This document shows positions 1-64,000 of a DNA stretch of 64,000 nt, piece after piece. Position 1 is the first letter of the stretch, and every line of letters starts with the position of its first letter. A program made the translations under genes and the position numbers. Origin of the DNA: Thalia democratica (taxonomy: Eukaryota); contig OZ241834.1 of the NCBI GenBank assembly GCA_965202585.1, positions 682,001-746,000 on the forward strand, in the 5' to 3' direction. The notes beneath the pieces were generated by a model. It did no database searches. It was not told the DNA's origin and worked only from the letters and a program-made list of their open reading frames with translations.

Positions 1-3000
1 GATTAGGATGTTGGGACAATCATGGGTAGGCGAAGCTATTTCCGCACATACTTGTTTGGAATGCCGAAACCTCATTTTTCGACGGACCCGTTGATTAGGA
101 TGTTGGGACAATCATGGGTAGGCGAAGCTATTTCCGCACATACTTGTTTGGAATGCCGAAACCTCATTTTTCGACGGACCCGTTGATTAGGATGTTGGGA
201 CAATCATGGGTAGGCGAAGCTATTTCCGCACATACTTGTTTGGAATGCCCAAACCTCCTTCTTCGACGAATACGTTGATTAGGATGTTGGGACAATCATG
301 CGGTAGGCGAAGCTATTTCCGCACATACTTGTTTGAAATTCCCAAACCTCCTTTTTCGACGAATACGTTGATTAGGATGTTGGGACAATCATGGGTAGGC
401 GAAGCTATTTCCGCACATACTTGTTTGGAATGCCCAAACCTCATTTTTCGACGGACCCGTTGATTAAAATGCTGAGACAATCATGCGGTAGGCGAAGCTA
501 TTTCCGCACATACTGGTTTGGAATGCCCAAACCTCCTTTTTCGACGAACCTGTTGATTAGGATGTTGGGACAATCATGGGTAGGCGAAGCTATTTCCGTA
601 CATACTTGTTTGGAATGCCCAAACCTCATTTTTCGACGGATACGTTGATTAGGATGTTGGGACAATCATGGGTAGGCGAAGCTATTTCCGCACATACTTG
701 TTTGGAATGCCCAAACCTCCTTTTTCGACGAATACGTTGATTAGGATGTTGAGACAATCATGCGGTAGGCGAAGCTATTTCCGCACATACTTGTTTGGAA
801 TGCCCAAACCTCCTTTTTCGACGGATACGTTGATTAGGATGTTGGGACAATCATGGGTAGGCGAAGCTATTTCCGCACATACTTGTTTGGAATACCGAAA
901 CCTCATTTTTCGACGGACCCGTTGATTAGGATGTTGGGACAATCATGGGTAGGCGAAGCTATTTCCGCACATACTTGTTTGGAATGCCCAAACCTCATTT
1001 TTCGACGGACCCGTTGATTAGGATGTTGGGACAATCATGGGTAGGCGAAGCTATTTCCGCACATACTTGTTTGGAATGCCCAAACCTCCTTTTTCGACGA
1101 ATACGTTGATTAGGATGTTGGGACAATCATGCGGTAGGCGAAGCTATTTCCGCACATACTTGTTTGGAATGCCCAAACCTCCTTTTTCGACGAATACGTT
1201 GATTAGGATGTTTGGACAATCATGGGTAGGCGAAGCTATTTCCGCACATACTGGTTTGGAATGCCCAAACCTCCTTTTTCGACGGACCCGTTGATTAGGA
1301 TGTTGGGACAATCATGGGTAGGCGAAGCTATTTCCGCACATACTGGTTTGGAATGCCCAAAACTCCTTTTTCGACGGATACGTTGATTAGGATGTTGGGA
1401 CAATCATGCGGTAGGCGAAGCTATTTCCGCACATACTTGTTTGGAATGCCCAAACCTCCTTTTTCGACGAACCCGTTGATTAGGATGTTGAGACAATCAT
1501 GGGTAGGCGAAGCTATTTCCGCACATACTTGTTTGGAATGCCGAAACCTCATTTTTCGACGGACCCGTTGATTAGGATGTTGGGACAATCATGGGTAGGC
1601 GAAGCTATTTCCGAACATACTTGTTTGGAATGCCCAAACCTCATTTTTCGACGGATACGTTGATTAGGATGTTGAGACAATCATGCGGTAGGCGAAGCTA
1701 TTTCCGCACATACTTGTTTGGAATGCCGAAACCTCCTTTTTCGACGAATACGTTGATTAGGATGTTGGGACAATCATGCGGTAGGCGAAGCTATTTCCGC
1801 ACATACTTGTTTGGAATGCCGAAACCTCATTTTTCAACGGACCCGTTGATTAGGATGTTGGGACAATCATGGGTAGGCGAAGCTATTTCCGAACATACTT
1901 GTTTGGAATGCCCAAACCTCATTTTTCGACGGATACGTTGATTAGGATGTTGAGACAATCATGCGGTAGGCGAAGCTATTTCCGCACATACTTGTTTGGA
2001 ATGCCCAAACCTCCTTTTTCGACGAATACGTTGATTAGGATGTTGGGACAATCATGGGTAGGCGAAGCTATTTCCGCACATACTTGTTTGGAATGCCGAA
2101 ACCTCATTTTTCGACGGACCCGTTGATTAGGATGTTGGGACAATCATGGGTAGGCGAAGCTATTTCCGAACATACTTGTTTGGAATGCCCAAACCTCCTT
2201 TTTCGACGAATACGTTGATTAGGATGTTGGGACAATCATGCGGTAGGCGAAGCTATTTCCGCACATACTTGTTTGGAATGCCCAAACCTCGTTTTTCGAC
2301 GGATACGTTGATTAGGATGTTGAGACAATCATGGGTAGGCGAAGCTATTTCCGCACATACTGGTTTGAAATTCCCAAACCTCCTTCTTCGACGAATACGT
2401 TGATTAGGATGTTGGGACAATCATGGGTAGGCGAAGCTATTTCCGCACATACTTGTTTGGAATGCCCAAACCTCCTTTTTCGACGGACCCGTTGATTAGG
2501 ATGTTGGGACAATCATGGGTAGGCGAAGCTATTTCCGTACATACTTGTTTGGAATGCCCAAACCTCATTTTTCGACGGATACGTTGATTAGGATGTTGAG
2601 ACAATCATGCGGTAGGCGAAGCTATTTCCGCACATACTTCTTTGGAATGCCGAAACCTCCTTTTTCGACGAATACGTTGATTAGGATGTTGGGACAATCA
2701 TGGGTAGGCGAAGCTATTTCCGCACATACTGGTTTGGAATGCCCAAACCTCATTTTTCGACGGATACGTTGATTAGGATGTTGGGACAATCATGGGTAGG
2801 CGAAGCTATTTCCGCACATACTGGTTTGAAATTCCCAAACCTCCTTCTTCGACGAATACGTTGATTAGGATGTTGGGACAATCATGGGTAGGCGAAGCTA
2901 TTTCCGCACATACTTGTTTGGAATGCCCAAACCTCCTTTTTCGACGAACCCGTTGATTAGGATGTTGGGACAATCATGGGTAGGCGAAGCTATTTCCGAA

Positions 3001-3491
3001 CATACTTGTTTGGAATGCCCAAACCTCCTTTTTCGACGAATACGTTGATTAGGATGTTGGGACAATCATGCGGTAGGCGAAGCTATTTCCGCACATACTG
3101 GTTTGAAATTCCCAAACCTCCTTTTTCGACGGATACGTTGATTAGGATGTTGAGACAATCATGGGTAGGCGAAGCTATTTCCGCACATACTTGTTTGGAA
3201 TGCCCAAACCTCATTTTTCGACGGATACATTGATTAGGATGTTGGGACAATCATGGGTAGGCGAAGCTATTTCCGCACATACTTGTTTGGAATGCCCAAA
3301 CCTCCTTTTTCGACGGATACGTTGATTAGGATGTTGGGACAATCATGCGGTAGGCGAAGCTATTTCCGCACATACATGTTTGGAATGCCCAAACCTCATT
3401 TTTCGACGAATACGTTGATTAGGATGTTGGGACAATCATGGGTAGGCGAAGCTATTTCCGCACATACTTGTTTGGAATGCCCAAACCTCAT
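1..3491. repeat. Satellite array 1: ~38 tandem 92/93-bp units derived from the thumb-coding region of a non-LTR RT (RT sense on minus strand); runs off the window start
   Basis: GATTAGGATG recurs at 1, 93, 185 and onward. Units carry CATGGGTAGG (92 bp) or CATGCGGTAGG (93 bp). The reverse complement of the 93-bp unit translates to NKYVRK*LRLPHDCPNILINVFVEKGGLGIP. Confidence 0.97.
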
Positions 3492-3494
3492 AGG

Positions 3495-6400
3495 AAAGAT
3501 AATTGTAGAAATATGAAATTATTTTAATAAATGGTGTAGTTTTTTCTTTGCGTTTTCAGTTTATTCATACTTGATTATGGGGTAGCTTATATAATTGTTA
3601 GGTTGTTTATCAAAACTATAATTACTAAGATAATTTCCAAAATTGATACCTTTGTTTTTTACTTGCAATTAGCTGAAAATTGATAGAAAATATATCAGAG
3701 AGTATCAGCTTCATCAAAGCCTAATCGAAACACCTAAGAATAACAGCATTGGAAAGTTGATTGAAAAAATATGAAATTATTTTAATAAATGGTGTAGTGT
3801 TTTGTTGCGTTTTCAGTTTTTTTCTTACTTGATTATGGTGTATCTTTTATAATTGTTAAGTCGGTTATCGACACTTTAATTACTATAAGACTTCTAATAG
3901 TAATACCTTTGTTTTTCTAGTTGCATTTAGCTGACAATTATTAGAAAATATCTCATAGAGTATCAGCTTTATCAAAGCCCAGTCGAACCAGCTAAGAATG
4001 ACTGCATTGCAAAGATAATTGTAGATATATGAAATTATTTCGATAGATGGTGTAGTGTTTTGTTGCGTTTTCAGTGTTTTTCATACTTGATTATGGGGTA
4101 ATTTTTATAATTGTTAGGTCGTTTATAAACACTTTAAGTACTAAGATAATTTATAGAAGTGATATATTTGATTTTCTATTTGCATTCAGCCGAAAATTAA
4201 ATGAAATAATCTCTAAAAGTATTAGCTTTATCAAAGCCCAGTCAAACCAACTAAGAATGACTGCATTGCAAAGATAATTGTAGAAGTATGAAATTATTTT
4301 AATAAATGGTGTAGTGTTTTGTTGCGTATTTAGTTTTTTTAATACTTGATTATGGAGTAACTTTGATAATTGTTAAGTCGTTTATAAACGCTTTATTTAC
4401 TAAAATAATTTCTAAAAGTAATAACTTTGATTTTCTTGTTGCAATTAGCTGAAAATTATTAGAAAATATCTTATAGAATCTCAGCTTTATCAAAGCCCGG
4501 TCGAACCATCTAAGTATGACTGCATTGCAAAGATAATTGTAGATATATGAAATTATTTTAATAAATGGTGTAGTGTTTTGTTGCGTTTTCAGTTTTTTTC
4601 ATACTTGATTATGGGGTAAGTTTTCTAATTATTAGGTCGTTTATCAACATTTTAATCACTGTGATAATTGTAGAAGTATGAAATTATTTTAATAAATGGT
4701 TTAGTGTTTTGTTGCGTTTTCAGTGTTTTTCATATTTGATTATTGGGTAACTTTTATAATTGTTAGGTCGTTTATCAATGCATTATTTACCAAAATAATT
4801 TTTAAAAGTGATAACTTTGATTTTCTAGTCGCATTTAGCTGAAAATTATTAGAAAATATCTTATCTTATAGAATCTCAGCTTTATCAAAGCCAAGTCGAA
4901 CCAGCTAATAATGACTGCATTGAAAAGATAATTGTAAATATATGAAATAATTTGATTAATTGTGTAGTGTTTTCTTGCGTTTACAGTTTTTTTCATACTT
5001 CATTATGGGGTCACTTTTCTAAATATAAGGTCGTTTGTCAACACTTTTATTACTAGGATAACTTCTAATACTGATAACTTTGATTTTATAGTTGCATTTA
5101 GCTTATAATTATTATAAAATATATCTGAGAGTATCAGTTTTAACAAAACCCAGTCGAACCAGCTATTAATGACTGCATTGCAAAGATAATGGCAGAAATT
5201 TAAAATTATTTTAATAAATGGTGTACTGTTTTGTCGCGTTTTCAGTTTTTTTTTTTATACTTGATTATGGAGTAACTTTTATAATTGTTAGGTCGTTTAT
5301 CGACACTTTAATTACTAAGATATCTTCTTAAAGTGATACCTTTGTTTTTCTAGTTGCATTTAGCCGAAAATTATTAGAAATTATCTCTAAGAGCATTAGC
5401 TTTTTCAAAGCCCAGTCAAACCATCTAAGAATGACTGCATTGAAAATATAATTGTAGAAATATAAAATTATTTTAATAAATGGTGTAGTGTTTTGTTGCG
5501 TTTTCATTTTATTCATACTTTATTATGGTGTATCTAATATAAATGTTAGGTCGTTTATCAACACTTTAATTACTAAGATAACTTGTAAAATTGATAATTT
5601 TGATTTTATAGTCGCATTTAGCTGATAATTATTATAAAAAATATCTGAGAATTACAGTTTTATCAAAGCCGAGTTGAACCAGCTAAGAATGACTGCATTG
5701 CAAAGATAAAAATAAAAACAGAAATTTTTTTAATAAATGGTGTAGTGTTTTGTTGCATTTTCAGTTTTTTTCATACTTAATTTTTGGGTAACTTTTATAA
5801 TTGTTAGGTCGTTTCACAACACTTTAATTAATAAAATAACTTCTGGAAGTGATAACTTTGTTTTTCTAGTTGCATTTAGCTGAAGGTTATTAGAAATTAT
5901 CCTTAAGAGTATTAGCTTTTTCAAAGCCCAGTGGAACCATCTTAGAATGACTGCATTGCAAAGATAATCGTAGAAACTTAAAATTATTCTAATAAATGGT
6001 GTAGTATTTTGTTGCGTTTTCAGTTTTTTCATACTTGATTATGGGGTATATTTTATAATTGTTAGGTCGTTTATCAACGCTTTATTTACCAAAATAATTT
6101 CTAAAAGTGATAACTTTGATTTTCTTGTTGCAATTAGCTGAGAATTATTAGAAAATATTTTATCTTATAGAGTCTCAGCTTTATCGAAGCCCAGTCGAAC
6201 CAGCTAATAATGACTGCATTAAGAAAATAATTGTAGATATATGAAATTATTTTAATAAATGGTTTAGTGTTTTGTTACGTTTTCAGTGTTTTTCGTACTT
6301 GATTATGGGGTAACTTTTACAATTGTAGGTCGTTTATCAACACGTTAATTACTATGAAAACTTCTAAAAGTAATACCTTTGTTTTTCTAATTGCATTTAG

Positions 6401-7561
6401 CTGATAATTGATAGAAATATCTAAGAGAGTATCAGCTTTATCTAAGCCCACTCGAACCATCTAAGAATGACTGCATTGCAAAGATAATGGTAGAAATTTG
6501 AAATTATTTTAATAAATGGTGTAGTGTTTTTTTGCATTTTCAGTTTATTAATACTTGATTATGGGTAAATTTTATAATTGTTAGGTCGTTTCACAACACT
6601 TTAATTACTAATATAACTTCTAGAAGTATTAACTTTGTTTTTCTAGTTGCATTAAGCTGACAAATATTAGAAAATATCGTATCTTATAGAATCTCAGCTT
6701 TATCGAAGCCCAGTCGATCCAGCTAAGTATGACTGATTGCAAAGATAATTGTAGGAATATGAAATTGTTTTAATAAATGGTTTAGTGTTTTGTTGCGTTT
6801 TCAGTGTTTTTCATACTTGATTATGGGGTAACTTTTACAATTGTTAAGTCGTTTATCAACACTTAAATTACTATGAAAACTTCTTAAAGTCATACCTTTG
6901 TTTTTCTAGTTGCATTTCGCTGACAATTATTAGAAAATATCTCAGAGAGTATCAGCTTTATCAAAGCCCAGTCAAACCATCTAAGAATGACTGCATTGCA
7001 AAGATAATTGTAGAAATACGGAATTATTTTAATAAATGCTATAGTATTTTGTTGAGTTTTCAGTGTTTTTCATACTTGATTGTTGAGTAATTTTTACAAT
7101 TGTAAGTCGTTTATCAACACTTTAATTACTATAAAAACTTCTAAAGGTAATACCTTTGTTTTTCTAAATGCATTTAGCTGACAATTGATAGAAAATATCT
7201 CAGAGAGTATCAGCTTTATCTAAGCCCACTCGAACCATTTAAGAATGACTGCATTGCAAAGATAATTGTAGAAATTTAAAATTATTTTAATAAATGCTGT
7301 AGTTTTTTCTTTGCGTTTTCAGTTTCTTTATACTTGATTATTGGGTAACTATTCTAATTGTTAGGTCGTTTATCAACACTTTAATTACTAAGATAATTTA
7401 TAGAAGTGATATATTTGATTTTCTACTTGCATTTAGCCGAAAATTAATTGAAATTATCTCTAAAAGTATCAGCTTTATCAAAGCCCAGTCGAAAATCTAA
7501 GAATGACTGCATTCGAAGATAATTGTACAAGTATGAAATTATTTTAATAAATGGTGTAGTG
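3495..7561. repeat. Satellite array 2, left part: diverged ~260-bp AT-rich tandem units
   Basis: The motif GAATGACTGCATTGCAAAGATAATTGTAG recurs about every 260 bp (e.g. 3996, 4255). Monomers differ visibly by many substitutions and small indels. Confidence 0.95.
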
Positions 7562-11443: not shown

Positions 11444-12097
11444 ATTTTTATCTATCTGATAGCTTTTTTGTGTCAAATCTAAATTTAACTACTTAATATG
11501 TTAAAATTGTTAAAAATTCCAGATTTTTTCTAAGTTATTTTTTTGCCTAAATTGTCAAATTTCAGAATTTTCCAGGTTTCTAGGTAAATTGGCAACTCTG
11601 TATAGTTTTATTTCTTAGTCTAACTTAGTGACTTTTCAAAAAAAAAAAAAAACTGGAAATATCATGAGGTGATAGTTAATAATAAATAACATAGATTTTT
11701 ACAAACCATTTATGATCCCAAATAACATATATGTCAGGTTATAAAATAGTGAGAGGGATTTAAATCGTCTATGATCTATGTAATTGTTAAATAAGGAAAT
11801 ATTTACTTGAAAGTAGGAGTCATAAGCACTTGATTTTTTTTTCTATCTGTTACATAAATAAAAGAAACTTTTTTTTTCAAGTTTCACCTCAGGGTCAAAT
11901 AAATAATAGCAAGCTAAAATTAGTAAAATAGCAAGAAAAAAAGTAAAAATCTTATGACAGCCCAAAATTTTAAAATCGCCCTCTTTTCGCCCTCTTACTA
12001 GTTATCGCCCACCCTTTCGCCCCCTTACTAATTATCGCCCCCCAAATTACTAAAATCGCCCCCAGGGGGGCGATATCGCCCACTTTGGGAAACCCTG

Positions 12098-15000: not shown

Positions 15001-17182
15001 TTATAATTGTTAGGTCGTTTATAAACGCTTTATTTACTAAGATATCTTCTAAAAGTGATAACTTCGAGTTTCTAGTTGTATTTAGCCGATAATTATTAGA
15101 AAACATCTCATAGAAACTCAGCTTTATTGAAGCTCAGTCGAACCAGCTAAGAATGACTGCATTGCAAGGATAATTGTAGAAATATAAAACTATTTTAATA
15201 AATGGTGTATTATTTTATTGCCTTTTCAGTTTTTTTCAAACTTGATAATGGGGTAACTTTTATAATAGTTAGGTTGTTTATCAACGCTTTAATTACTAAG
15301 ATAACTTCTAAAAGTGATACCTTTGTTTTTCTAGCTGCATTTGGTTGAAAATTGTTAGAAAATATATCTGAGATTATCAGCTTAGGAAAGCCCAGTCGAA
15401 CTAACTAAGAATCACTGCATTGCAAAGATAATTGTAGAAATATAAAATTATTTTAATAAATGTTGTAGTTTTTTCTTTGCGTTTTCAGTTTATTCATACT
15501 TGATTATGGGGTAGCTATTTTAATTGTTAAGTCGTTTATAAACGCTTTATTTACCAAAATAATTTCTTAAAGTGATAACTTTGATTTTCTAGTTGCATTT
15601 AGCTAAAAATTAATAGAAAATATCTTATCTTATAGAATCTCAGCTTTATTGAAGCCCAGTCGAACCAGCTAAGAATGACTTCATTGCAAAGATAATTGTA
15701 GAAATATGAAATTTTTGTAATAAATAGTGCAGTTTTTTTTCTGTGTTTTCAGTTTTTTTCATACTTGATTATGGGGTAACTTTTGTAATTGTTAGGTCGT
15801 TTATCAACACTTTAATTACTAAGATATCTTCTAGAAGTGATACCTTTGTGTTTCTAGTTGCATTTAGCCGAAAATTAATTGAAATTATCTCAAAAAGTGT
15901 AAGCTGTATTAAAGCCCAGTCGAACCATCTAAGAATGACTGAATTGAAAAGATAATTGTAGAAGTATGAAATTATTTTAATAAATGGTGTAGTGTTTTGT
16001 TGCGTATTCAGTTTATTTCATACTTCATTATGGGGAAACTTTTATTATTGTTAGGTCGTTTATAAACGCTTTATTTAACAAAATAATTTCTAAAAGTGAT
16101 ACCTTTGATTTTCTTGTTGCAATTAGCTGAAAATTATTAGAAAATATCTTATACAATCTCAGCTTTTTCAAAGGTCAGTCGAACCATCTATGAATGACTG
16201 CATTGCAAAGATAATTGTAGATATATGAAATTAATTCGATAGATTGTGTAGTGTTTTGTTGCGTTTACAGTTTTTATCAAACTTGATTATGGGGTAACTT
16301 TAATAATTGTTAGGTCGTTTATCAACATTTTTGTTACTAAGATAACTTCTAAAAGTGATAACTTTTATTTTATAGTTGCATTTAGCTGATAATTATTAGA
16401 AAATATATCTGAGAGTATCAGCTTTATAAAAACTCATTCGAACCAGCTAAGAATGACTGCATTGCAAAGATAATGGTAGAAATATGAAATTATTTTAATA
16501 AATGGTGTAGTGTTTTGTTGCGTTTTCAGTGTTTTTCATACTGATTATGGGGTAATTTTTACAATCGTTAAGTCGTTTATCAACACTTTATATACCAAGA
16601 TAACTTTTAAAAGTGATACCTTTGTTTTTCTAGTTGCATTTAGCTGAAAGTTAATTGAAATTATATCTAAGAGTATCAGCTTTATCAAAGCCCAGTCAAA
16701 CCATCTAAGAATGACTCCATTGCAAAGATAATTGTAGAAATATAAAATTATTTTAATAAATGGTGTAGTGTTTTGTTGCGTTTTCATTTTATTCATACTT
16801 GATTATGGTGTATCTTTTATAATTGTTAGGTCGTTTATCAACACTTTAATTACTAAGATAACTTCTCAAATTGATACCTTTGATTTTAAAGTTGCATTTA
16901 GCTCATAATTTTTAGAAAATATATCTTAGAGTATCAGTTTTATCAAAACCCAGTCGAACCAGCTAAGAATGACTGCATTGCCAAGATAATGGTAGAAATA
17001 TGAAATTATTTTAATAAATGGTGTAGTGTTTTGTTGCGTTTTCAGTGTTTTTCATACTTATTTATGGGGTAAATTTTATTATTGTTAGGTCGTTTCACAA
17101 CCCAGAAGTAATAACTTTGTTTTTCTAGTTGCATTTAGCTGAAAATTATTAGAATTTATCTTTAAGAGTAAAATGGTGTAGT
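12098..17182. repeat. Satellite array 2, right part (~260-bp units)
   Basis: Same monomer as 3495-7561. It resumes in register at the TSD GTGTAGTG and ends with a truncated unit near 17100-17182. Confidence 0.95.
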
Positions 17183-41935: not shown

Positions 41936-41994
41936 CTTAATCCGGCTAGTTAACAGAATCAAACCGAAAACTATCTAAACTGGAGCATGTACAA

Positions 41995-42095: not shown

Positions 42096-42195
42096 CTTTA
42101 ATTTAGTAATTAATGGTTGGCTCTCGTCTTTTATTTCTGGATAACTTTTTTCTAATATATTAGATTTTTTCAAGTCTTTATTTGTTCGTTACAAC

Positions 42196-43093: not shown

Positions 43094-43094
43094 A

Positions 43095-44215: not shown

Positions 44216-44299
44216 TCATTATAAGTTATTAAAGATCGTGAAGAACAAGTTTATACTTATTTTTTGTAACTTTATTAAAACCGGTTGAAACTATCAAAG

Positions 44300-50200: not shown

Positions 50201-53200
50201 CATGGATTGTAACAGGAAGCAAAAGTTGACCAACTTTAAACCAGTTGACCCACTCAAGGGTAAGAGTAAATTTGAGAAAATGAATTACTTATGAGTAAAT
50301 GAAGTACCTTCGTAAAACGTTCGATAGTGTCAACCATCTCAAGATAGTCGAGGTGTTGAATTCGCGTGGGGTACGAAAAATAACTCGTATAATAGCGCAA
50401 ATGTACCGAGGTAACGGTGCATTTCTGCAAAGAACAGATAGCAATAAAAGGCGGAAACAGCTTAAATATAAACATGGATTGTAACAGGAGGCAAAGTTGA
50501 CCAACTTTAAACCAGTTGACCCACTCAAGGGTAAGAGTAAATTTGAGAAAATGAATTACTTATGAGTAAATGGAGTACCTTCGTAAAGTGTTCGATAGTG
50601 TCAACCATCTCAAGAGAGTCGAGGTGTTGTATTCGCGTGGGGTACGAAAAATGACTCGTATAATAGCGCAAATGTACCGAGGTAACGGTGCATTTCTGCA
50701 AAGAACAGATAGCAATAAAAGGCGGAAAGAGCTCAAATATAAACATGGATTGTAACAGGAGGCAAAGTTGACCAACTTTAAACCAGTTGACCCACTCAAG
50801 GGTAAGAGTAAATTTGAGAAAATGAATTACTTATGAGTAAATGGAGTACCTTCGTAAAGTGTTCGATAGTGTCAACCATTTCAAGATAGTCGAGGTGTTG
50901 TATTCGCGTGGGGTACGAAAAATGACTCGTATAATAGCGCAAATGTACCGAGGTAACAGTGCATTTCTGCAAAGAACAGATAGCAATAAAAGGCGGAAAG
51001 AGCTCAAATATAAACATGGATTGTAACAGGAAGCAAAAGTTGACCAACTTTAAACCAGTTGACCCACTCAAGGGTAAGAGTAAATTTGAGAAAATGAATT
51101 ACTTATGAGTAAATGAAGTACCTTCGTAAAACGTTCGATAGTGTCAACCATCTCAAGATAGTCGAGGTGTTGAATTCGCGTGGGGTACGAAAAATAACTC
51201 GTATAATAGCGCAAATGTACCGAGGTAACAGTGCATTTCTGCAAAGAACAGATAGCAATAAAAGGCGGAAAGAGCTTAAATATAAACATGGATTGTAACA
51301 GGAGGCAAAGTTGACCAACTTTAAACCAGTTGACCCACTCAAGGGTAAGAGTAAATTTGAGAAAATGAATTACTTATGAGTATATGAAGTACCTTCGTAA
51401 AGTGTTCGATACTATCAACCATTTCAAGATAGTCGAGGTGTTGGATTCGCTTGGGGTACGAAAAATGACTCGTATAATAGCGCAAATGTACCGAGGTAAC
51501 GGTGCATTTCTGCAAAGAACAGATAGCAATAAAAGGCGGAAAGAGCTCAAATATAAACATGGATTGTAACAGGAGGCAAAGTTGACCAACTTTAAACCAG
51601 TTGACCCACTCAGCGGTAAGAGTAAATTTGAGAAAATGAATTACTTATGAGTATATGGAGTACCTTCGTAAAGTGTTCGATACTGTCAACCATCTCAAGA
51701 TAGTCGAGGTGTTGTATTCGCGTGGGATACGATAAATGACTCGTATAATAGCGCAAATGTACCGAGGTAACGGTGCATTTCTGCAAAGAACAGATAGCAA
51801 TAAAAGGCGGAAAGAGCTCCAATATAAACATGGATTGTAACAGGAAGCAAAAGTTGACCAACTTTAAACCAGTTGACCCACTCAAGGGTAAGAGTAAATT
51901 TGAGAAAATGAATTACTTATGAGTATATGGAGTACCTTCGTAAAGTGTTCGATAGTGTCAACCATCTCAAGATAGTCGAGGTGTTGAATTCGCGTGGGGT
52001 ACGAAAAATGACTCGTATAATAACGCAAATGTACCGAGGTAACGGTGCATTTCTGCAAATAACAGATAGCAATAAAAGGCGGAAAGAGCTCAAATATAAA
52101 CATGGATTGTAACAGGAAGCAAAATTGACCAACTTTAAACCAGTTGACCCAATAAAGGGTAAGAGTAAATTTGAGAAAATGAACTACTTATGAGTAAATG
52201 GAGTACCTTCGTAAAGTGTTCGATACTGTCAACCATCTCAAGATAGTCGAGGTGTTGAATTCGCGTTGGGTACGAAAAATGACTCGTACAATAGCGCAAA
52301 TGTACCGAGGTAACGATGCATTTCTGCAAAGAACAGATAGCAATAAAAGGCGGAAAGAACTCCAATATAAACATGGATTGTAACAATAAGCAAAGTTGAC
52401 CAACTTTAAACCAGTTGACCCACTCAAGGGTAAGAGTAAATTTGAGAAAATGAATTACTTATGAGCAAATGGAGTACCTTCGTAAAGTGTTCGATAGTGT
52501 CAACCATCTCAAGATAGTCGAGGTGTTGAATTTGCGTGGGGTACGAAAAATGACTCGTATAATAGCGCAAATGTACCGAGGTAACGGTGCATTTTTGCAA
52601 AGAACAGATAGCAATAAAAGGCGGAAAGAGCTCCAATATAAACATGGATTGTAACAATAAGCAAAGTTGACCAACTTTAAACCAGTTGACCCACTCAAGG
52701 GTAAGAGTAAATTTGAGAAAATGAATTACTTATGAGTAAATGGAGTACCTTCGTAAAGTGTTCGATAGTGTCAACCATCTCAAGATAGTCGAGGTGTTGA
52801 ATTCGCGTGGGGTACGAAAAATGACTCGTACAATAGCGCAAATGTACCGAGGTAACGGTGCATTTTTGCAAAGAACAGATAGCAATAAAAGGCGGAAAGA
52901 GCTCCAATATAAACATGGATTGTAACAATAAGCAAAGTTGACCAACTTTAAACCAGTTGACCCACTCAAGGGTAAGAGTAAATTTGAGAAAATGAATTAC
53001 TTATGAGTAAATGGAGTACCTTCGTAAAGTGTTCGATAGTGTCAACCATCTCAAGATAGTCGAGGTGTTGAATTCGCGTGGGGTACGAAAAATGACTCGT
53101 ACAATAGCGCAAATGTACCGAGGTAACGGTGCATTTCTGCAAAGAACAGATAGCAATAAAAAGCGGAAAGAGCTCCAATATAAACATAGATTGTAACAAT

Positions 53201-56200
53201 AAGCAAAGTTGACCAACTTTAAACCAGTTGACCCACTCAAGGGTAAGAGTAAATTTGAGAAAATGAAATACTTATGAGTAAATGGAGTACCTTCGTAAAG
53301 TGTTCGATAGTGTCAACCATCTCAAGATAGTCGAGGTGTTGAATTCGCGTGGGGTACGAAAAATAACTTGTATAATAGCGCAAATGTACCGAGGTAACGG
53401 TGCATTTCTGCAAATAACAGATAGCAATAAAAGGCGGAAAGAGCTCCAATATAAACATGGATTGTAACAATAAGCAAAGTTGACCAACTTTAAACCAGTT
53501 GACCCACTCAAGGGTAAGAGTAAATTTGATAAAATGAAATACTTATGAGTAAATGGAGTACCTTCGTAAAGTGTTCGATAGTGTCAACCATCTCAAGATA
53601 GTCGAGGTGTTGAATTCGCGTGGGGTACGAAAAATGACTCGTATAATAGCGCAAATGTACCGAGGTAACGGTGCATTTCTGCAAATAACAGATAGCAATA
53701 AAAGGCGGAAAGAGCTCCAATATAAACATGGATTGTAACAATAAGCAAAGTTGACCAACTTTAAACCAGTTGACCCACTCAAGGGTAAGAGTAAATTTGA
53801 GAAAATGAATTACTTATGAGTAAATGGAGTACCTTCGTAAAGTGTTCGATAGTGTCAACCATCTCAAGATAGTCGAGGTGTTGAATTCGCGTGGGGTACG
53901 AAAAATGACTCGTATAATAGCGCAAATGTACCGAGGTAACGGTGCATTTCTTTAAAGAACAGATAGCAATAAAAGGCGAAAGAGCTCCATAGATTGTAAC
54001 AATAAGCAAAATTGACCAACAAAAAACCAATTGACCCACTCAAGGGTAAGAGTAAATTTGAGAAAATGAATTACTTATGAGTAAATTGAATTCCTTCGTA
54101 AAGTGTTCGATAGTGTAAACCATCTCAAGATAGTCGAGGTGTTGAATTCGCGTGGGGTACGAAAAATGACTCGTATAATAGCGCAAATGTACCGAGGTAA
54201 CGGTGCATTTCTGCAAAGAACAGATAGCAATAAAAGGCGGAAAGAGCTCCAATATAAACATGGATTGTAACAATAAGCAAAGTTGACCAACTTTAAACCA
54301 ATTGACCCACTCAAGGGTAAGAGTAAATTTGAGAAAATGAAATACTTATGAGTAAATGGAGTACCTTCGTAAAGTGTTCGATAGTGTCAACCATCTCAAG
54401 ATAGTCGAGGTGTTGAATTCGCGTGGGGTACGAAAAATGACTCGTATAATAGCGCAAATGTACCGAGGTAACGGTGCATTTCTGCAAATAACAGATAGCA
54501 ATAAAAGGCGGAAAGAGCTCCAATATAAACATGGATTGTAACAGGAAGCAAAGTTGACCAACTTTAAACCAGTTGACCCACTCAAGGGTAAGAGTAAATT
54601 TGAGAAAATGAATTACTTATGAGTAAATGGAGTACCTTCGTAAAGTGTTCGATAGTGTCAACCATCTCAAGATAGTCGAGGTGTTAAATTCGCGTGGGGT
54701 ACGAAAAATGACTCGTATAATAGCGCAAATGTACCGAGGTAACGGTGCATTTCTGCAAAGAACAGATTACAATAAAAGGCGGAAAGAGCTCCAATATAAA
54801 CATGGATTGTAACAGGAGGCAAAGTTGACCAACTTTAAACTAGTTGACCCACTCAAGGGTAAGAGTAAATTTGAGAAAATGAAACACTTATGAGTAAATG
54901 GAGTACCTTCGTAAAGTGTTCGATAGTGTCAACCATCTCAAGATAGTCGAGGTGTTGAATTCGCGTGGGGTACGAAAAATGACTCGTACAATAGCGCAAA
55001 TGTACCGAGGTAACGGTGCATTTCTGCAAAGAACAGATAGCAATAAAAGGCGGAAAGAGCTCCAATATAAACATAGATTGTAACAATAAGCAAAGTTGAC
55101 CAACTTTAAACCAGTTGACCAATTTAAGGGTAAGAGTAAATTTGAGAAAATGAATTACTTATGAGTAAATGGAGTACCTTCGTAAAACGTTCGATAGTGT
55201 CAACCATCTCAAGATAGTCGAGGTGTTGAATTCGCGTGGGGTACGAAAAATGAGTATAATAGCGCATATGTACAGAGGTAACGGTGCATTTCTGCAAAGA
55301 ACAGATAACAATAAAAGGCGGAAAGAGCTCCAATATAAACATGGATTGTAACAATAAGCAAAGTTGACCAACTTTAAACCAGTTGACCAACTCAAGGGTA
55401 AGAGTAAATTTGAGAAAATGAATTACTATGAGTAAATGGAGTACCTTCGTAAAGTGTTCGATAGTGTCAACCATCTCAAGATAGTCGAGGTGTTGAATTC
55501 GCGTGGGGTACGAAAAATGACTCGTATAATAGCGTATATGAGGTATAGGTGCAATTCTGTCACGAAAAGAACGAATAGCAATAGAACGGGGAAAGAGTTC
55601 CAAAAGAAACATGGATTGTAACAGGGGGCAAAGTTGACCAACTTTAAACCAGTTGACCCACTCAAGGGTAAGAGTAAATTTGAGAAAATGAATTACTTAT
55701 GAGTAAATGGGGTACCTTCGTAAAGTGTTCGATAGTGTCAACCATCTCAAGATAGTCGAGGTGTTGAATTCGCGTGGGGTACGAAAAATGACTCGTATAA
55801 TAGCGCAAATGTACCGAGGTAACGGTGCATTTCTGCAAATAACAGATAGCAATAAAAGGCGGAAAGAGCTCCAATATAAACATGGATTGTAACAGGAAGC
55901 AAAGTTGACCAACTTTAAACCAGTTGACCCACTCAAGGGTAAGAGTAAATTTGATAAAATGAATTACTTATGAGTAAATGGAGTACCTTCGTAAAGTGTT
56001 CGATAGTGTCAACCATCTCAAGATAGTCGAGGTGTTAAATTCGCGTGGGGTACGAAAAATGACTCGTATAATAGCGCAAATGTACCGAGGTAACGGTGCA
56101 TTTCTGCAAAGAACAGATTACAATAAAAGGCGGAAAGAGCTCCAATATAAACATGGATTGTAACAGGAGGCAAAGTTGACCAACTTTAAACTAGTTGACC

Positions 56201-59200
56201 CACTCAAGGGTAAGAGTAAATTTGAGAAAATGAAACACTTATGAGTAAATGGAGTACCTTCGTAAAGTGTTCGATAGTGTCAACCATCTCAAGATAGTCG
56301 AGGTGTTGAATTCGCGTGGGGTACGAAAAATGACTCGTACAATAGCGCAAATGTACCGAGGTAACGGTGCATTTCTGCAAAGAACAGATAGCAATAAAAG
56401 GCGGAAAGAGCTCCAATATAAACATAGATTGTAACAATAAGCAAAGTTGACCAACTTTAAACCAGTTGACCAATTTAAGGGTAAGAGTAAATTTGAGAAA
56501 ATGAATTACTTATGAGTAAATGGAGTACCTTCGTAAAACGTTCGATAGTGTCAACCATCTCAAGATAGTCGAGGTGTTGAATTCGCGTGGGGTACGAAAA
56601 ATGACTCGTATAATAGCGCATATGTACAGAGGTAACGGTGCATTTCTGCAAAGAACAGATAACAATAAAAGGCGGAAAGAGCTCCAATATAAACATGGAT
56701 TGTAACAATAAGCAAAGTTGACCAACTTTAAACCAGTTGACCAACTCAAGGGTAAGAGTAAATTTGAGAAAATGAATTACTATGAGTAAATGGAGTACCT
56801 TCGTAAAGTGTTCGATAGTGTCAACCATCTCAAGATAGTCGAGGTGTTGAATTCGCGTGGGGTACGAAAAATGACTCGTATAATAGCGTATATGAGGTAT
56901 AGGTGCAATTCTGTCACGAAAAGAACGAATAGCAATAGAACGGGGAAAGAGTTCCAAAAGAAACATGGATTGTAACAGGAGGCAAAGTTGACCAACTTTA
57001 AACCAGTTGACCCACTCAAGGGTAAGAGTAAATTTGAGAAAATGAATTACTTATGAGTAAATGGGGTACCTTCGTAAAGTGTTCGATAGTGTCAACCATC
57101 TCAAGATAGTCGAGGTGTTGAATTCGCGTGGGGTACGAAAAATGACTCGTATAATAGCGCAAATGTACCGAGGTAACGGTGCATTTCTGCAAAGAACAGA
57201 TAGCAATAAAAGGCGGAAAGAGCTCAAATATAAACATGGATTGTAACAGGAAGCAAAGTTGACAAAATTTAAACCAGTTGACCCACTCAAGGGTAAGAGT
57301 AAATTTGATAAAATGAATTACTTATGAGTAAATGGAGTACCTTCGTAAAGTGTTCGATAGTGTCAACCATCTCAAGATAGTCGAGGTGTTGTATTCGCGT
57401 GGGGTATGAAAAATGACTCGTATAATAGCACAAATGTACCGAGGTAACGGTGCATTTCTGCAAAGAACAGATAGCAATAAAAGGCGGAAAGAGCTCCAAT
57501 ATAAACATGGATTGTAACAGGAAGCAAAGTTGTAAAAATTTAAACCAGTTGACCCACTCAAGGGTAAGAGTAAATTTGAGAAAATGAATTACTTATGAGT
57601 AAATGGAGTACCTTCGTAAAGTGTTCGATAGTGTCAACCATCTCAAGATAGTCGAGTTGTTAATTTGCGTGGGGTACGAAAAATGACTCGTATAATAGCG
57701 CATATGTACCGAGGTAACGGTGCATTTCTGCAAAGAACGGATAGCAATAAAAGGCGGAAAGAGCTCCAATATAAACATGGATTGTAACAGAAGGCAAAGT
57801 TGACCAACTTTAAACCAGTTGACCCACTCAAGGGTAAGAGTAAATTTGAGAAAATGAATTACTTATGAGTAAATGGAGTACCTTCGTAAAGTGTTCGATA
57901 GTGTCAACCATCTCAAGATAGTCGAGGTGTTGAATTTGCGTGGGGTACGAAAAATGACTCGTATAATAGCGCAAATGTACCGAGGTAACGGTGCATTTCT
58001 GCAAAGAACAGATAGCAATAAAAGGCGGAAAGAGCTCCAATATAAACATGGATTGTAACAATAAGCAAAGTAGACCAACTTTAAACCAGTTGACCAACTC
58101 AAGGGTAAGAGTAAATTTGATAAAATGAATTACTTATGAGTAAATGCAGTACCTTCGTAAAGTGTTCGATAGTGTCAACCATCTCAAGATAGTCGAGGTG
58201 TTGAATTCGCGTGGGGTACGAAAAATGACTCGTATAATAGCGCAAATGTACCGAGGTAACGGTGCATTTCTGCAAAGAACAGATAGCAATAAAAGGCGGA
58301 AAGAGCTCAAATATAAACATGGATTGTAACAGGAAGCAAAGTTGACCAACTTTAAACCAGTTGACCCACTCAAGGGTAAGAGTAAATTTGAGAAAATGAA
58401 TTACTTATGAGTAAATGGAGTACCTTCGTAAAGTGTTCGATAGTGTCAACCATCTCAAGATAGTCGAGGTGTTGAATTCGCGTGGGGTACAAAAAATGAC
58501 TCGAATAATAGCGCAAATGTACCGAGGTAACGGTGCATTTCTGCAAATAACAGATAGCAATAAAAGGCGGAAAGAGCTCCAATATAAACATGGATTGTAA
58601 CAATAAGCAAAGTTGACCAACTTTAAACCAGTTGACCAACTCAAGGGTAAGAGTAAATTTGATAAAATGAATTACTTATGAGTAAATGCAGTACCTTCGT
58701 AAAGTGTTCGATAGTGTCAACCATCTCAAGTTAGTCGAGGTGTTGAATTCGCGTGGGGTACGAAAAATGACTCGTATAATAGCGCAAATGTACCGAGGTA
58801 ACGGTGCATTTCTGCAAAGAACAGATAGCAATAAAAGGCGGAAAGAGCTCCAATATAAACATGGATTGTAACAATAAGCAAAGTTGACCAACTTTAAACC
58901 AATTGACCCACTCAAGGGTAAGAGTAAATTTGAGAAAATGAATTACTTATGAGTAAATGCAGTACCTTCGTAAAGTGTTCGATAGTGTCAACCATCTCAA
59001 GTTAGTCGAGGTGTTGTATTCGCGTGGGGTACGAAAAATGACTCGTATAATAGCGCAAATGTACCGAGGTAACGATGCACTTCTGCAAAGAACAGATAGC
59101 AATAAAAAGTGGAAAGAACTCCAATATAACCATGGATTGTAACAGGAGGCAAAATTGACCAACTTTAAACCAGTTGACCCACTCAAGGGTAAGAGTAAAT

Positions 59201-62200
59201 TTGAGAAAATGAATTACTTATGAGTAAATGGAGTACCTTCGTAAAGTGTTCGATAGTGTCAACCATCTCAAGATAGTCGAGGTGTTAAATTCGCGTGGGG
59301 TACGAAAAATGACTCGTATAATACCGCAAATGTACCGAGGTAACGGTGCATTTCTGCAAAGAACAGATAGCAATAAAAGGCGGAAAGAGCTCCAATATAA
59401 ACATGGATTGTAACAATAAGCAAAGTTGACCAACTTTAAACCAGTTGACCCACTCAAGGGTAAGAGTAAATTTGAGAAAATGAAATACTTATGAGTAAAT
59501 GGAGTACCTTCGTAAAACGTTCGATAGTGTCAACCATCTCAAGAGAGTCGAGGTGTTGAATTCGCGTGGGGTACGAAAAATGACTCGTATAATAGCGCAA
59601 ATGTACCGAGGTAACGGTGCATTTCTGCAAAGAACAGATAGCAATAAAAGGCGGAAAGAGCTCCAATATAAACATAGATTGTAACAATAAGCAAAGTTGA
59701 CCAACTTTAAACCAGTTGACCAATTTAAGGGTAAGAGTAAATTTGAGAAAATGAATTACTTATGAGTAAATGGAGTACCTTCGTAAAACGTTCGATAGTG
59801 TCAACCATCTCAAGATAGTCGAGGTGTTGAATTCGCGTGGGGTACGAAAAATGACTCGTATAATAGCGCATATGTACAGAGGTAACGGTGCATTTCTGCA
59901 AAGAACAGATAACAATAAAAGGCGGAAAGAGCTCCAATATAAACATGGATTGTAACAATAAGCAAAGTTGACCAACTTTAAACCAGTTGACCAACTCAAG
60001 GGTAAGAGTAAATTTGAGAAAATGAATTACTATGAGTAAATGGAGTACCTTCGTAAAGTGTTCGATAGTGTCAACCATCTCAAGATAGTCGAGGTGTTGA
60101 ATTCGCGTGGGGTACGAAAAATGACTCGTATAATAGCGTATATGAGGTATAGGTGCAATTCTGTCACGAAAAGAACGAATAGCAATAGAACGGGGAAAGA
60201 GTTCCAAAAGAAACATGGATTGTAACAGGAGGCAAAGTTGACCAACTTTAAACCAGTTGACCCACTCAAGGGTAAGAGTAAATTTGAGAAAATGAATTAC
60301 TTATGAGTAAATGGGGTACCTTCGTAAAGTGTTCGATAGTGTCAACCATCTCAAGATAGTCGAGGTGTTGAATTCGCGTGGGGTACGAAAAATGACTCGT
60401 ATAATAGCGCAAATGTACCGAGGTAACGGTGCATTTCTGCAAAGAACAGATAGCAATAAAAGGCGGAAAGAGCTCAAATATAAACATGGATTGTAACAGG
60501 AAGCAAAGTTGACAAAATTTAAACCAGTTGACCCACTCAAGGGTAAGAGTAAATTTGATAAAATGAATTACTTATGAGTAAATGGAGTACCTTCGTAAAG
60601 TGTTCGATAGTGTCAACCATCTCAAGATAGTCGAGGTGTTGTATTCGCGTGGGGTATGAAAAATGACTCGTATAATAGCACAAATGTACCGAGGTAACGG
60701 TGCATTTCTGCAAAGAACAGATAGCAATAAAAGGCGGAAAGAGCTCCAATATAAACATGGATTGTAACAGGAAGCAAAGTTGTAAAAATTTAAACCAGTT
60801 GACCCACTCAAGGGTAAGAGTAAATTTGAGAAAATGAATTACTTATGAGTAAATGGAGTACCTTCGTAAAGTGTTCGATAGTGTCAACCATCTCAAGATA
60901 GTCGAGTTGTTAATTTGCGTGGGGTACGAAAAATGACTCGTATAATAGCGCATATGTACCGAGGTAACGGTGCATTTCTGCAAAGAACGGATAGCAATAA
61001 AAGGCGGAAAGAGCTCCAATATAAACATGGATTGTAACAGAAGGCAAAGTTGACCAACTTTAAACCAGTTGACCCACTCAAGGGTAAGAGTAAATTTGAG
61101 AAAATGAATTACTTATGAGTAAATGGAGTACCTTCGTAAAGTGTTCGATAGTGTCAACCATCTCAAGATAGTCGAGGTGTTGAATTTGCGTGGGGTACGA
61201 AAAATGACTCGTATAATAGCGCAAATGTACCGAGGTAACGGTGCATTTCTGCAAAGAACAGATAGCAATAAAAGGCGGAAAGAGCTCCAATATAAACATG
61301 GATTGTAACAATAAGCAAAGTTGACCAACTTTAAACCAGTTGACCAACTCAAGGGTAAGAGTAAATTTGATAAAATGAATTACTTATGAGTAAATGCAGT
61401 ACCTTCGTAAAGTGTTCGATAGTGTCAACCATCTCAAGATAGTCGAGGTGTTGAATTCGCGTGGGGTACGAAAAATGACTCGTATAATAGCGCAAATGTA
61501 CCGAGGTAACGGTGCATTTCTGCAAAGAACAGATAGCAATAAAAGGCGGAAAGAGCTCAAATATAAACATGGATTGTAACAGGAAGCAAAGTTGACCAAC
61601 TTTAAACCAGTTGACCCACTCAAGGGTAAGAGTAAATTTGAGAAAATGAATTACTTATGAGTAAATGGAGTACCTTCGTAAAGTGTTCGATAGTGTCAAC
61701 CATCTCAAGATAGTCGAGGTGTTGAATTCGCGTGGGGTACAAAAAATGACTCGAATAATAGCGCAAATGTACCGAGGTAACGGTGCATTTCTGCAAATAA
61801 CAGATAGCAATAAAAGGCGGAAAGAGCTCCAATATAAACATGGATTGTAACAATAAGCAAAGTTGACCAACTTTAAACCAGTTGACCAACTCAAGGGTAA
61901 GAGTAAATTTGATAAAATGAATTACTTATGAGTAAATGCAGTACCTTCGTAAAGTGTTCGATAGTGTCAACCATCTCAAGTTAGTCGAGGTGTTGAATTC
62001 GCGTGGGGTACGAAAAATGACTCGTATAATAGCGCAAATGTACCGAGGTAACGGTGCATTTCTGCAAAGAACAGATAGCAATAAAAGGCGGAAAGAGCTC
62101 CAATATAAACATGGATTGTAACAATAAGCAAAGTTGACCAACTTTAAACCAATTGACCCACTCAAGGGTAAGAGTAAATTTGAGAAAATGAATTACTTAT

Positions 62201-64000
62201 GAGTAAATGCAGTACCTTCGTAAAGTGTTCGATAGTGTCAACCATCTCAAGTTAGTCGAGGTGTTGTATTCGCGTGGGGTACGAAAAATGACTCGTATAA
62301 TAGCGCAAATGTACCGAGGTAACGATGCACTTCTGCAAAGAACAGATAGCAATAAAAAGTGGAAAGAACTCCAATATAACCATGGATTGTAACAGGAGGC
62401 AAAATTGACCAACTTTAAACCAGTTGACCCACTCAAGGGTAAGAGTAAATTTGAGAAAATGAATTACTTATGAGTAAATGGAGTACCTTCGTAAAGTGTT
62501 CGATAGTGTCAACCATCTCAAGATAGTCGAGGTGTTAAATTCGCGTGGGGTACGAAAAATGACTCGTATAATACCGCAAATGTACCGAGGTAACGGTGCA
62601 TTTCTGCAAAGAACAGATAGCAATAAAAGGCGGAAAGAGCTCCAATATAAACATGGATTGTAACAATAAGCAAAGTTGACCAACTTTAAACCAGTTGACC
62701 CACTCAAGGGTAAGAGTAAATTTGAGAAAATGAAATACTTATGAGTAAATGGAGTACCTTCGTAAAACGTTCGATAGTGTCAACCATCTCAAGAGAGTCG
62801 AGGTGTTGAATTCGCGTGGGGTACGAAAAATGACTCGTATAATAGCGCAAATGTACCGAGGTAACGGTGCATTTCTGCAAAGAACAGATAGCAATAAAAG
62901 GCGGAAAGAGCTCCAATATAAACATGGATTGTAACAATAAGCAAAGTTGACCAACTTTAAACCAGTTGACCAACTCAAGGGTAAGAGTAAATTTGATAAA
63001 ATGAATTACTTATGAGTAAATGGAGTACCTTCGTAAAACGTTCGATAGTGTCAACCATCTCAAGAGAGTCGAGGTGTTGAATTCGCGTGGGGTACGAAAA
63101 ATGACTCGTATAATAGCGCAAATGTACCGAGGTAACGGTGCATTTCTGCAAAGAACAGATTACAATAAAAGGCGGAAAGAGCTCCAATATAAACATGGAT
63201 TGTAACAGGAGGCAAAGTTGACCAACTTTAAACCAGTTGACCCACTCAAGGGTAAGAGTAAATTTGAGAAAATGAATTACTTATGAGTAAATGGAGTACC
63301 TTCGTAAAGTGTTCGATAGTGTCAACCATCTCAAGATAGTCGAGGTGTTAATTTGCGTGGGGTACGAAAAATGACTCGTATAATAGCGCAAATGTACCGA
63401 TGTAACGGTGCATTTCTGCAAATAACAGATAGCAATAAAAGGCGGAAAGAGCTCCAATATAAACATGGATTGTAACAGGAGGCAAAGTTGACCAACTTTA
63501 AACCAGTTGACCCACTCAAGGGTAAGAGTAAATTTGAGAAAATGAATTACTTATGAGTAAATGGAGTACCTTCGTAAAGTGTTCGATAGTGTCAACCATC
63601 TCAAGATAGTCGAGGTGTTAATTTGCGTGGGGTACGAAAAATGACTCGTATAATAGCGCAAATGTACCGATGTAACGGTGCATTTCTGCAAAGAACAGAT
63701 AGCAATAAAAGGCGGAAAGAGCTCAAATATTAACATGGATTGTAACAATAAGCAAAGTTGACCAACTTTAAACCAGTTGACCAACTCAAGGGTAAGAGTA
63801 AATTTGAGAAAATGAATTACTTATGAGTAAATGGAGTACCTTCGTAAAGTGTTCGATAGTGTCAACCATCTCAAGATAGTCGAGGTGTTGTATTCGCGTG
63901 GGGTACGAAAAATGACTCGTATAATAGCGCAAATGTACCGAGGTAACGGTGCATTTCTGCAAAGAACAGATAGCAATAAAAGGCGGAAAGAGCTCCAATA
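44300..64000. repeat. Satellite array 3: ~72 tandem 271-bp units derived from RT motif 3-4 sequence (RT sense on plus strand); runs off the window end
   Basis: ORF starts are spaced 270-272 bp (46231, 46502, 46773, 47043, 47314...). Units translate YLRKVFDSVNHLKIVEVLNSRGVRKMTRIIAQMYRGN, which aligns to the adjacent relic DLKK(E/S)(F/I)DSVN...EVLNSTGIPRKITRQITNMY(R/G)GN. Confidence 0.97.

What the first reader, a model, noticed from the sequence alone, without database searches (positions are those of the whole stretch)
1..64000. Two independent RT-derived satellites bracket the locus: candidate retroelement-memory system
Seen: the arrays at the two ends derive from different RT segments (thumb on minus, motifs 3-4 on plus), and relics of both segments lie in 41150-44215. 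Two such events in one window suggest a recurrent mechanism. Inference only: options are RT template jumping (known for R2 RT), rolling-circle amplification of excised circles, or break repair. Transcription of the arrays could supply abundant sense or antisense small RNA against the active family, like a piRNA cluster.
Basis: inference. Interest (0 to 1): 0.8.

Follow-up and report, generated by a model that had tools for sequence, protein, structure and literature searches.

The report
Satellite arrays born from dead R2 retrotransposons
The two big tandem arrays at the ends of this window are non-coding satellites that grew out of short pieces of the protein-coding region of dead R2-type retrotransposon copies. 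The same thing happened at least four times in this marine animal's genome, but nothing shows that the arrays act as a small-RNA "memory" against the element.

Summary
Observation confirmed. Array A (92-bp unit, 1-3491) is part of one 24.9-kb array. It copies about 30 codons just after the RT palm (thumb) of an R2-clade element, coding sense on the minus strand. Array B (271-bp unit, 44300-64000) is 32.7 kb in all. It copies RT motifs 3-4 plus a short upstream ORF piece, sense on the plus strand. A and B come from different R2 lineages.

The genome holds at least two more R2-ORF satellites, D (211 bp, about 52 kb) and E (163 bp, 3.9 kb). These are thumb-derived too, from two further lineages. 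So recurrence is real.

The arrays still join single-copy R2 sequence in ORF order: A on its 3' side, B and D on their 5' side. They lie in a block duplicated at least three times. This favours in-place DNA-level amplification inside dead copies over reverse-transcriptase jumping.

The "memory/piRNA" reading is unsupported:
- No RNA run holds the arrays.
- The parent lineages have no intact copy.
- A and B share no word of 18 nt or more with the most complete R2 copies found (three uninterrupted ORFs and the C6 copy).

"Bracketing" is a window-edge artefact. This is a new member of a known kind (TE-derived satellite DNA). The scan's first readers had already noted these same arrays, here and in the adjoining window.

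The parts
1..3491 (-). Array A: 92-bp satellite, the right-hand 3.5 kb of a single 24.9-kb array (C10:660554-685491). The unit is about 30 codons of the R2 lineage-X region just after the RT palm (thumb). It is non-coding: 92 is not a multiple of 3 and stops are present.
   Evidence: (262 pattern hits, all at one locus and on one strand)
3495..7561 (.). Satellite C: 258-bp AT-rich unit, abutting array A. No detectable R2 similarity. It belongs to the duplicated block.
   Evidence: no tblastn hit in 3400-41000; copies at C9:723-730k, C10:3.517-3.519M, C10:339-344k
12096..17095 (.). Satellite C, second stretch.
40042..41264 (-). 3' part of the lineage-X relic plus flank. It is 85% identical over 1267 bp to the DNA that follows array A (C10:658819-660043), so it is a paralogue of the array's host copy.
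41328..41418 (-). Single-copy counterpart of the array A unit, 76% identical with a 7-bp deletion.
41388..41936 (-). R2 lineage-X relic, RT motif 4/5 to thumb (rDNA R2 ORF aa 467-659), broken by stops and frameshifts.
43101..43839 (+). Fragment of a C6-like R2 copy, colinear with the ORF (C6 element positions 1555-2133; aa ~294-487 on the rDNA R2 ORF scale). It leads into array B.
43317..44094 (+). Three decayed proto-units of RT motifs 3-4, period about 240-250 bp. The best preserved is the ORF at 43803-44060.
44166..44226 (+). Out-of-order piece of the same ORF (C6 N-terminal ORF aa ~257-291), between the proto-units and the array.
44300..64000 (+). Array B: 271-bp satellite, the first 19.7 kb of a 32.7-kb array. 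The unit joins two non-adjacent pieces of the C6-like ORF: element positions ~1205-1285, then ~1915-2085 (motifs 3-4). About 630 bp of the ORF between them is missing.

Best explanation
Arrays A and B are ordinary, non-coding satellite DNAs. Each arose by in-place, DNA-level tandem amplification of a short internal segment of a dead R2-clade retrotransposon copy lying outside the rDNA. The likely route is a first duplication at a short direct repeat, followed by unequal exchange or replication slippage.

A grew from a lineage-X copy whose 3' part still follows the array. B grew from an internally deleted fragment of a C6-like copy whose 5' part still precedes it.

Both lie in a satellite-rich block with the layout [satellite C ... 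X relic ... B]. That block has been copied to at least three places, all within 0.7-3.5 Mb of the starts of contigs C9 and C10. The block also spawned two further R2-ORF satellites, D and E. No host function is needed to explain any of this.

Shown: derivation, lineage assignment, contiguity with flanking R2 sequence, and block duplication. Inferred: the amplification mechanism and the lack of function.
For: **The parent family is R2.** A 990-aa ORF matches Bombyx R2 structure 8gh6 at E=2e-90. It and a 978-aa copy on C37 both sit inside 28S rRNA genes.

**Lineage assignment.**
- A is 80-83% identical to lineage-X relics.
- D is 68-70% identical to the rDNA R2.
- E is 76-77% identical to the C6 copy.
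- A, D and E are only 52-57% identical to each other.
- B's oldest unit is 75% identical in protein to C6, against about 32% for C6 versus lineage X over the same RT stretch.

**In-place origin.**
- The last A unit runs without a break into the rest of an X copy. The join is colinear with four other X copies up to the ORF end.
- B is preceded by a colinear R2 fragment and proto-units.
- D is preceded by single-copy aa 545-595.

**Microhomology.**
- The parental X sequence has a CAAA-type direct repeat of about 7-8 bp at both ends of the 92-bp segment.
- The internal deletion junction in B shares ATGGA.

**Block duplication.** Satellite C, the X relic and the B proto-units recur in the same order at C9:723-744k. 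They recur inverted at C10:3.506-3.519M.

**Scale.** R2-like copies are few, about a dozen. A is confined to one locus.
Against: - Three of the four satellites overlap the same ~15 codons (aa ~655-670), although they come from different lineages. Under random placement this has a rough probability of 0.01-0.03 (my estimate). It hints at something specific to that segment.
- Array A does have the polarity expected from an RT-made concatemer at the 5' end of a truncated insertion.
- Absence of function is not demonstrated. No germline or small-RNA data for this species were available.
Confidence: 0.7

Rival explanations
1. The first few tandem copies were made by the R2 reverse transcriptase itself, through repeated template switching or end-to-end template jumping during target-primed reverse transcription. 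They were later expanded by unequal exchange.
For: - Array A lies at the 5' end of a 5'-truncated X copy with a contiguous 3' part.
- Three lineages produced arrays from the same thumb-coding stretch.
- Two single-copy relics (C1007 and C10:3.458M) carry a partial ~45-bp duplicate of that stretch.
- Template jumping by R2 RT is established biochemistry (my own knowledge, not checked in papers here).
Against: - B and D have the opposite polarity. Their contiguous single-copy R2 sequence is on the 5' side, and there is no matching 3' part.
- The unit junction in A falls at a short direct repeat already present in the parent, as expected for DNA slippage.
- The arrays are too old (94-95% within an array) to read original junctions.
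Confidence: 0.15
2. The arrays are kept because their transcripts feed a piRNA-type pathway against R2.
For: - Both sense-derived (B) and antisense-derived (A) arrays exist on the plus strand.
- They lie in a TE-relic and satellite-rich block, like known piRNA clusters.
- Satellites and TE-fragment clusters make piRNAs in Drosophila (my own knowledge).
Against: - No RNA run was listed as holding A or B.
- Two metatranscriptomes from a sample whose DNA holds B gave no contig on the arrays. This is weak evidence, because contigs miss short RNAs.
- A and B share no word of 18 nt or more with the four most complete R2 copies found.
- Nucleotide identity to those copies is only 41-54% for A. For B it is 68-87% in local matches of 31-157 bp, and 68-78% for those longer than 50 bp.
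- The parental lineages have no intact member.
- A is a single-locus array.
Confidence: 0.1
3. Excised circles of R2 fragments were amplified by rolling-circle replication and re-inserted as ready-made arrays.
For: Homogeneous long arrays (24.9, 32.7 and 41 kb) from very short segments. A is present at one locus only.
Against: - Each array remains joined in ORF order to single-copy R2 sequence on one side.
- Decayed proto-units grade into B. This looks like growth in place, not insertion of a finished array.
Confidence: 0.05

Closest known systems
LINE ORF2-derived satellite DNAs (PROsat of Phodopus roborovskii, Pvc20 of harbour seal, chicken HinfI/CR1 repeat), as tabulated in the review PMC9659126
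   Same: Tandem arrays whose monomer is a piece of the coding region of a non-LTR retrotransposon, with coding capacity lost.
   Different: - Here the parent is the R2 clade, not L1 or CR1.
- At least four satellites arose from at least three lineages of a family with only about a dozen copies.
- Three of the four overlap the same thumb codons.
- The review states that non-coding, already repetitive TE parts are the usual source.
Double-insertion model for TE-to-satellite conversion (McGurk and Barbash 2018, PMC5932611)
   Same: TE sequence is the substrate for new tandem arrays, later expanded by unequal exchange.
   Different: That model starts from whole-element tandem dimers made by nested or site-specific insertion. 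Here the units are 92-275-bp internal ORF segments. I listed this paper from a search and did not read it in detail.
piRNA clusters and piRNA-producing satellites (Drosophila; my own knowledge)
   Same: TE-relic-rich, repeat-rich locus containing TE-derived sequence in both orientations.
   Different: No small-RNA evidence exists here. The arrays are too diverged from intact R2 copies to guide slicing.
Canonical R2 elements in 28S rDNA
   Same: The rDNA copies on C79 and C37 have the R2 architecture and sit inside 28S. The satellites' parents are relatives of these.
   Different: The parental copies of A, B and E lie outside rDNA. All copies found of their lineages are interrupted by stops or frameshifts.

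Membership tests
TE-derived satellite DNA | Long head-to-tail tandem array | tested here: met
   A is 24.9 kb (about 270 units). B is 32.7 kb (about 120 units).
TE-derived satellite DNA | Monomer homologous to an internal TE sequence, beyond chance | tested here: met
   E-values range from 1e-12 to 1e-32, and each satellite is closest to one specific R2 lineage.
TE-derived satellite DNA | No retained coding capacity or mobility | tested here: met
   Unit lengths 92, 163, 211 and 271 are not multiples of 3. Stops occur in the RT-sense frames.
R2 clade (parent elements) | Single ORF with N-terminal zinc finger, RT and C-terminal restriction-like endonuclease region | tested here: met
   - The 990-aa ORF aligns to R2Bm 8gh6 over residues 188-969 at E=2e-90.
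- RVT_1 covers aa 335-587, and a weak C2H2 hit appears in the C37 copy.
- The lineage-X C-terminal ORF hits R2 chain 9nl2_A residues 918-1009 at E=0.0017.
- The X relic matches the rDNA R2 ORF at E=1e-43.
R2 clade (parent elements) | Site-specific insertion in 28S rDNA | tested here: inconclusive
   Met for the C79 and C37 copies. Not met for the C9:6.3M copy. Lineage X and the C6-like copies that gave A, B and E lie in non-rDNA sequence.
piRNA cluster / small-RNA memory locus | 24-31-nt PIWI-bound small RNAs mapping to the locus | not testable with these tools
   No small-RNA or germline RNA run of this species was offered.
piRNA cluster / small-RNA memory locus | Transcription of the locus | tested here: inconclusive
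   Two metatranscriptome runs gave no contig on the relics or on array B. This is not proof of silence.
piRNA cluster / small-RNA memory locus | Near-perfect complementarity to an active element | tested here: not met
   No shared 18-mers between A or B and the four most complete R2 copies. The longest exact matches are 12 and 17 nt. No closer element was found by genome DNA search.
RT template-jump concatemer | Array at the 5' end of a 5'-truncated insertion, with a contiguous 3' part | tested here: inconclusive
   Met for A. Not met for B and D, whose contiguous flank is on the 5' side.

The most novel reading that the evidence does not exclude
The stretch of R2 that encodes the start of the thumb (about aa 655-670 on the rDNA R2 ORF scale) may be an intrinsic hotspot for satellite birth. 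Three R2 lineages each turned it into a separate array (A 92 bp, E 163 bp, D 211 bp). The cause could be that the R2 enzyme or its RNA/DNA stalls and switches template there. The resulting arrays, together with B, might then be used as a standing source of sense and antisense small RNA against R2.
Probability: 0.1. Interest if true: 0.65.

Novelty: new member of a known kind. Interest (0 to 1): 0.35.

Why it matters
Satellite DNA usually comes from the non-coding, already repetitive parts of transposons. Here a very low-copy, rDNA-specialised family (R2) gave at least four satellites from its coding region. Together they total well over 100 kb, more DNA than all R2 copies found in the assembly combined.

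Host copies, proto-repeats and paralogous blocks are preserved, so the early steps can be read directly. This gives a clean natural series for studying how a satellite starts.

The finding also cautions against reading function, such as piRNA memory, from TE-derived arrays without RNA data.

Tried and rejected
- **Twin-priming idea.** I asked whether the minus-strand relic (41388-41936) and the plus-strand fragment (43101-43839) are the two halves of one 5'-inverted insertion. The topology fits, but the halves belong to different R2 lineages: about 28% versus 63-75% protein identity to the C6 copy. Rejected.
- **Common ancestry of A, D and E.** Rejected. They are 52-57% identical to each other, and each is much closer to a different parent.
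- **Satellite C as a third R2-derived array.** No protein or DNA similarity to R2.
- **RNA evidence.** Both run searches listed no RNA holder. The one read-laying run showed RNA contigs only on an AT-rich stretch at 42452-42796, at 85-90% likeness. That match is not meaningful.
- **Periodicity.** Ungapped shift analysis for higher-order repeats was blurred by indels, apart from a weak 12-unit (3250-bp) signal in B.
- **Pfam on long antisense ORFs in B** (up to 169 aa) gave nothing.
Full report
**What is in the window.**
- Tandem Repeats Finder finds a 92-bp array at 1-3491, with 277- and 369-bp higher-order periods.
- It finds a 258-bp AT-rich satellite (C) at 3495-7561 and 12096-17095.
- It finds a 271-bp array at 44300-64000.
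- The two end arrays are much richer in G+C (38-45%) than the rest of the window (about 25%).
- The window is C10:682001-746000 of an 802-Mb assembly.
- Array A continues upstream to C10:660554 and is 24,938 bp in all.
- A 31-nt pattern from its unit occurs 262 times in the genome, all at this locus and on one strand.
- Array B continues 13 kb past the window and is 32,691 bp in all.
- 'Two satellites bracket the locus' therefore only describes where the window was cut.

**The parent family.**
- Searching the genome with the relic peptides found a few long ORFs.
- A 990-aa ORF on contig C79 has RVT_1 at aa 335-587. It aligns to the Bombyx R2 protein structure 8gh6 over almost its full length, E=2e-90.
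- That ORF and a 978-aa relative on C37 both lie inside 28S rRNA genes. They are canonical R2 elements.
- R2-like copies are few, about a dozen hits for either the N- or the C-terminal third.
- They fall into distinct lineages: the rDNA pair, a C6-like group (C6, C9:3.63M, C9:3.685M), a C9:6.3M copy, and 'lineage X'.
- Lineage X is known only from relics broken by stops. It is 27-36% identical in protein to the rDNA R2 but alignable from the RT to the C-terminal endonuclease region, E=1e-43. One of its ORF fragments hits R2 chain 9nl2_A at E=0.0017.

**Array A.**
- Read on the minus strand, its unit spells the conserved stretch that follows the RVT_1 match. By position this is the start of the thumb. 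That assignment is an inference from RT architecture.
- The peptide is nearly identical to that of lineage-X relics.
- At DNA level A is 80-83% identical to four X relics and 41-54% to other lineages.
- The counterpart inside the window (41328-41418) is real but more distant, at 76% with a 7-bp deletion.
- The last unit of the array (C10:660557-660648) runs straight into the remainder of an X copy. That join is colinear with four other X copies up to the end of the ORF.
- The array therefore grew inside a resident copy.
- The 3' part of that host copy, plus about 1 kb beyond the point where the other X copies stop aligning, is 85% identical to window 40042-41264. The window relic and the host of array A are thus paralogues, probably from a local segmental duplication.
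- In the parental sequence the 92-bp segment is flanked by a short CAAA-type direct repeat. This is what slippage or microhomology-mediated duplication would use.

**Array B.**
- Its unit joins two non-adjacent pieces of a C6-like ORF: element positions about 1205-1285, then about 1915-2085 (motifs 3-4). About 630 bp is missing between them, and the junction shares ATGGA.
- To its left, 43101-43839 is colinear with the same ORF. It is followed by a second and third decayed copy of the motif-3/4 segment and an out-of-order piece at 44166-44226.
- The best-preserved proto-unit (43803-44060) still hits RVT_1 at E=5.9e-5. It is 75% identical in protein to the C6 copy, whereas C6 and lineage X are about 32% identical over the same RT stretch.
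- A and B therefore come from different R2 lineages.

**More of the same elsewhere.** The loci reached from A- and B-like hits contain further R2-ORF satellites.
- D has a 211-bp unit covering aa ~596-675 and is closest to the rDNA R2 (68-70%). It occurs 248 times: 195 in one 41-kb array at C10:3459494-3500585, about 40 on C1007 and about 13 at C9:701-703k.
- E has a 163-bp unit covering aa ~616-678 and is closest to C6 (76-77%). It spans 3.9 kb at C10:3502386-3506296.
- B variants of 264, 265 and 275 bp lie on C9 and C10.
- A, D and E are 52-57% identical to each other, so they are three separate births.
- All three overlap at about aa 655-670. By my rough estimate this has a probability of 0.01-0.03 under random placement. 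It would be less surprising if 5'-truncated copies over-represent the 3' part of the element.

**Context.**
- Satellite C, the X relic and the B proto-units recur in the same order at C9:723-744k. They recur inverted at C10:3.506-3.519M.
- The junction of B with a tail-to-tail X relic is shared by the window's right flank, C1007 and C10:3.458M.
- The whole arrangement is a duplicated block, within 0.7-3.5 Mb of the starts of two large contigs. Each copy's arrays were homogenised separately: 94-97% identity within arrays, 80-93% between loci.

**Mechanism.**
- A has a contiguous 3' flank, the polarity expected if reverse transcriptase stuttered at the 5' end of a truncated insertion.
- B and D have contiguous 5' flanks and no matching 3' part.
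- With no consistent polarity, proto-units grading into B, and microhomology at junctions, DNA-level growth in place is the simplest reading.
- An RT-made seed for A cannot be excluded.
- Earlier notes of this scan report other large local tandem arrays in this genome. This suggests a general propensity, which I did not test.

**The memory hypothesis.**
- No RNA run was listed as holding A or B.
- I laid two metatranscriptomes on 41000-46000. They came from a sample whose DNA carries some B words. They gave contigs only on an AT-rich stretch, while a DNA run of the organism covered 29 of 30 bins, with much higher word depth on B.
- A and B share no exact 18-mer with the four most complete R2 copies. 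The longest shared words are 12 and 17 nt.
- DNA searches of the genome found no closer element.
- The parental lineages are represented only by broken copies.
- This does not prove silence. It does remove the sequence basis for slicing of a currently intact R2.

**Comparison with the literature.**
- The review PMC9659126 lists satellites derived from LINE ORF2 (PROsat, Pvc20, chicken HinfI/CR1). It notes that non-coding repetitive TE parts are the usual source.
- A full-text search for R2 retrotransposon together with satellite DNA returned no title or abstract describing an R2 ORF-derived satellite. The papers were not read, so this is not proof of novelty.
- I therefore file the finding as a new member of a known kind, with a modestly unusual recurrence.

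Noticed in passing
window 18336-26151 and 31183-39893: A large inverted duplication, arms 96-98% complementary in 11 blocks. The ~5-kb spacer holds the collectin-like ORF (27877-28191 -, Lectin_C E=0.0013). The paralogous blocks elsewhere appear to be about 16 kb shorter between satellite C and the X relic, so this palindrome may be specific to this copy.
   Followed up: partly
window 32746-37129: About 3.9 kb of extra DNA in the right arm only. It has 300-nt direct repeats (32746-33045 and 34944-35243, 99%) and an ORF at 36133-36711 (+) with a weak GIY-YIG hit (E=0.005). It may be a Penelope-like insertion.
   Followed up: no
window 42896-43045 (-): A 50-aa ORF with a weak RNase H match (E=0.014), lying between the X relic and the plus-strand R2 fragment. 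Probably debris of another element.
   Followed up: partly
L031:8589-8980 and L032:1266-1657: The rDNA units on contigs C79 and C37 carry U2 and U5 snRNA genes within about 1 kb of the 28S gene.
   Followed up: no
G000:C9:3684396-3716269: RT-like hits recur every ~4-5 kb on one strand. This may be a tandem series of R2-like or other LINE copies in a repeated target.
   Followed up: no
L003+L009 (C1007:~10770-10815) and L004:~7955-8000: Two single-copy lineage-X relics carry a partial ~45-bp direct duplicate of the same thumb segment that forms array A. The duplicate resembles the window relic's version.
   Followed up: partly
window 46763-47272, 55124-55612, 56475-56966, 59725-60216 (-): Open frames of 162-169 aa on the antisense strand of array B, running through almost two units. 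There is no Pfam match, so they are probably chance.
   Followed up: partly
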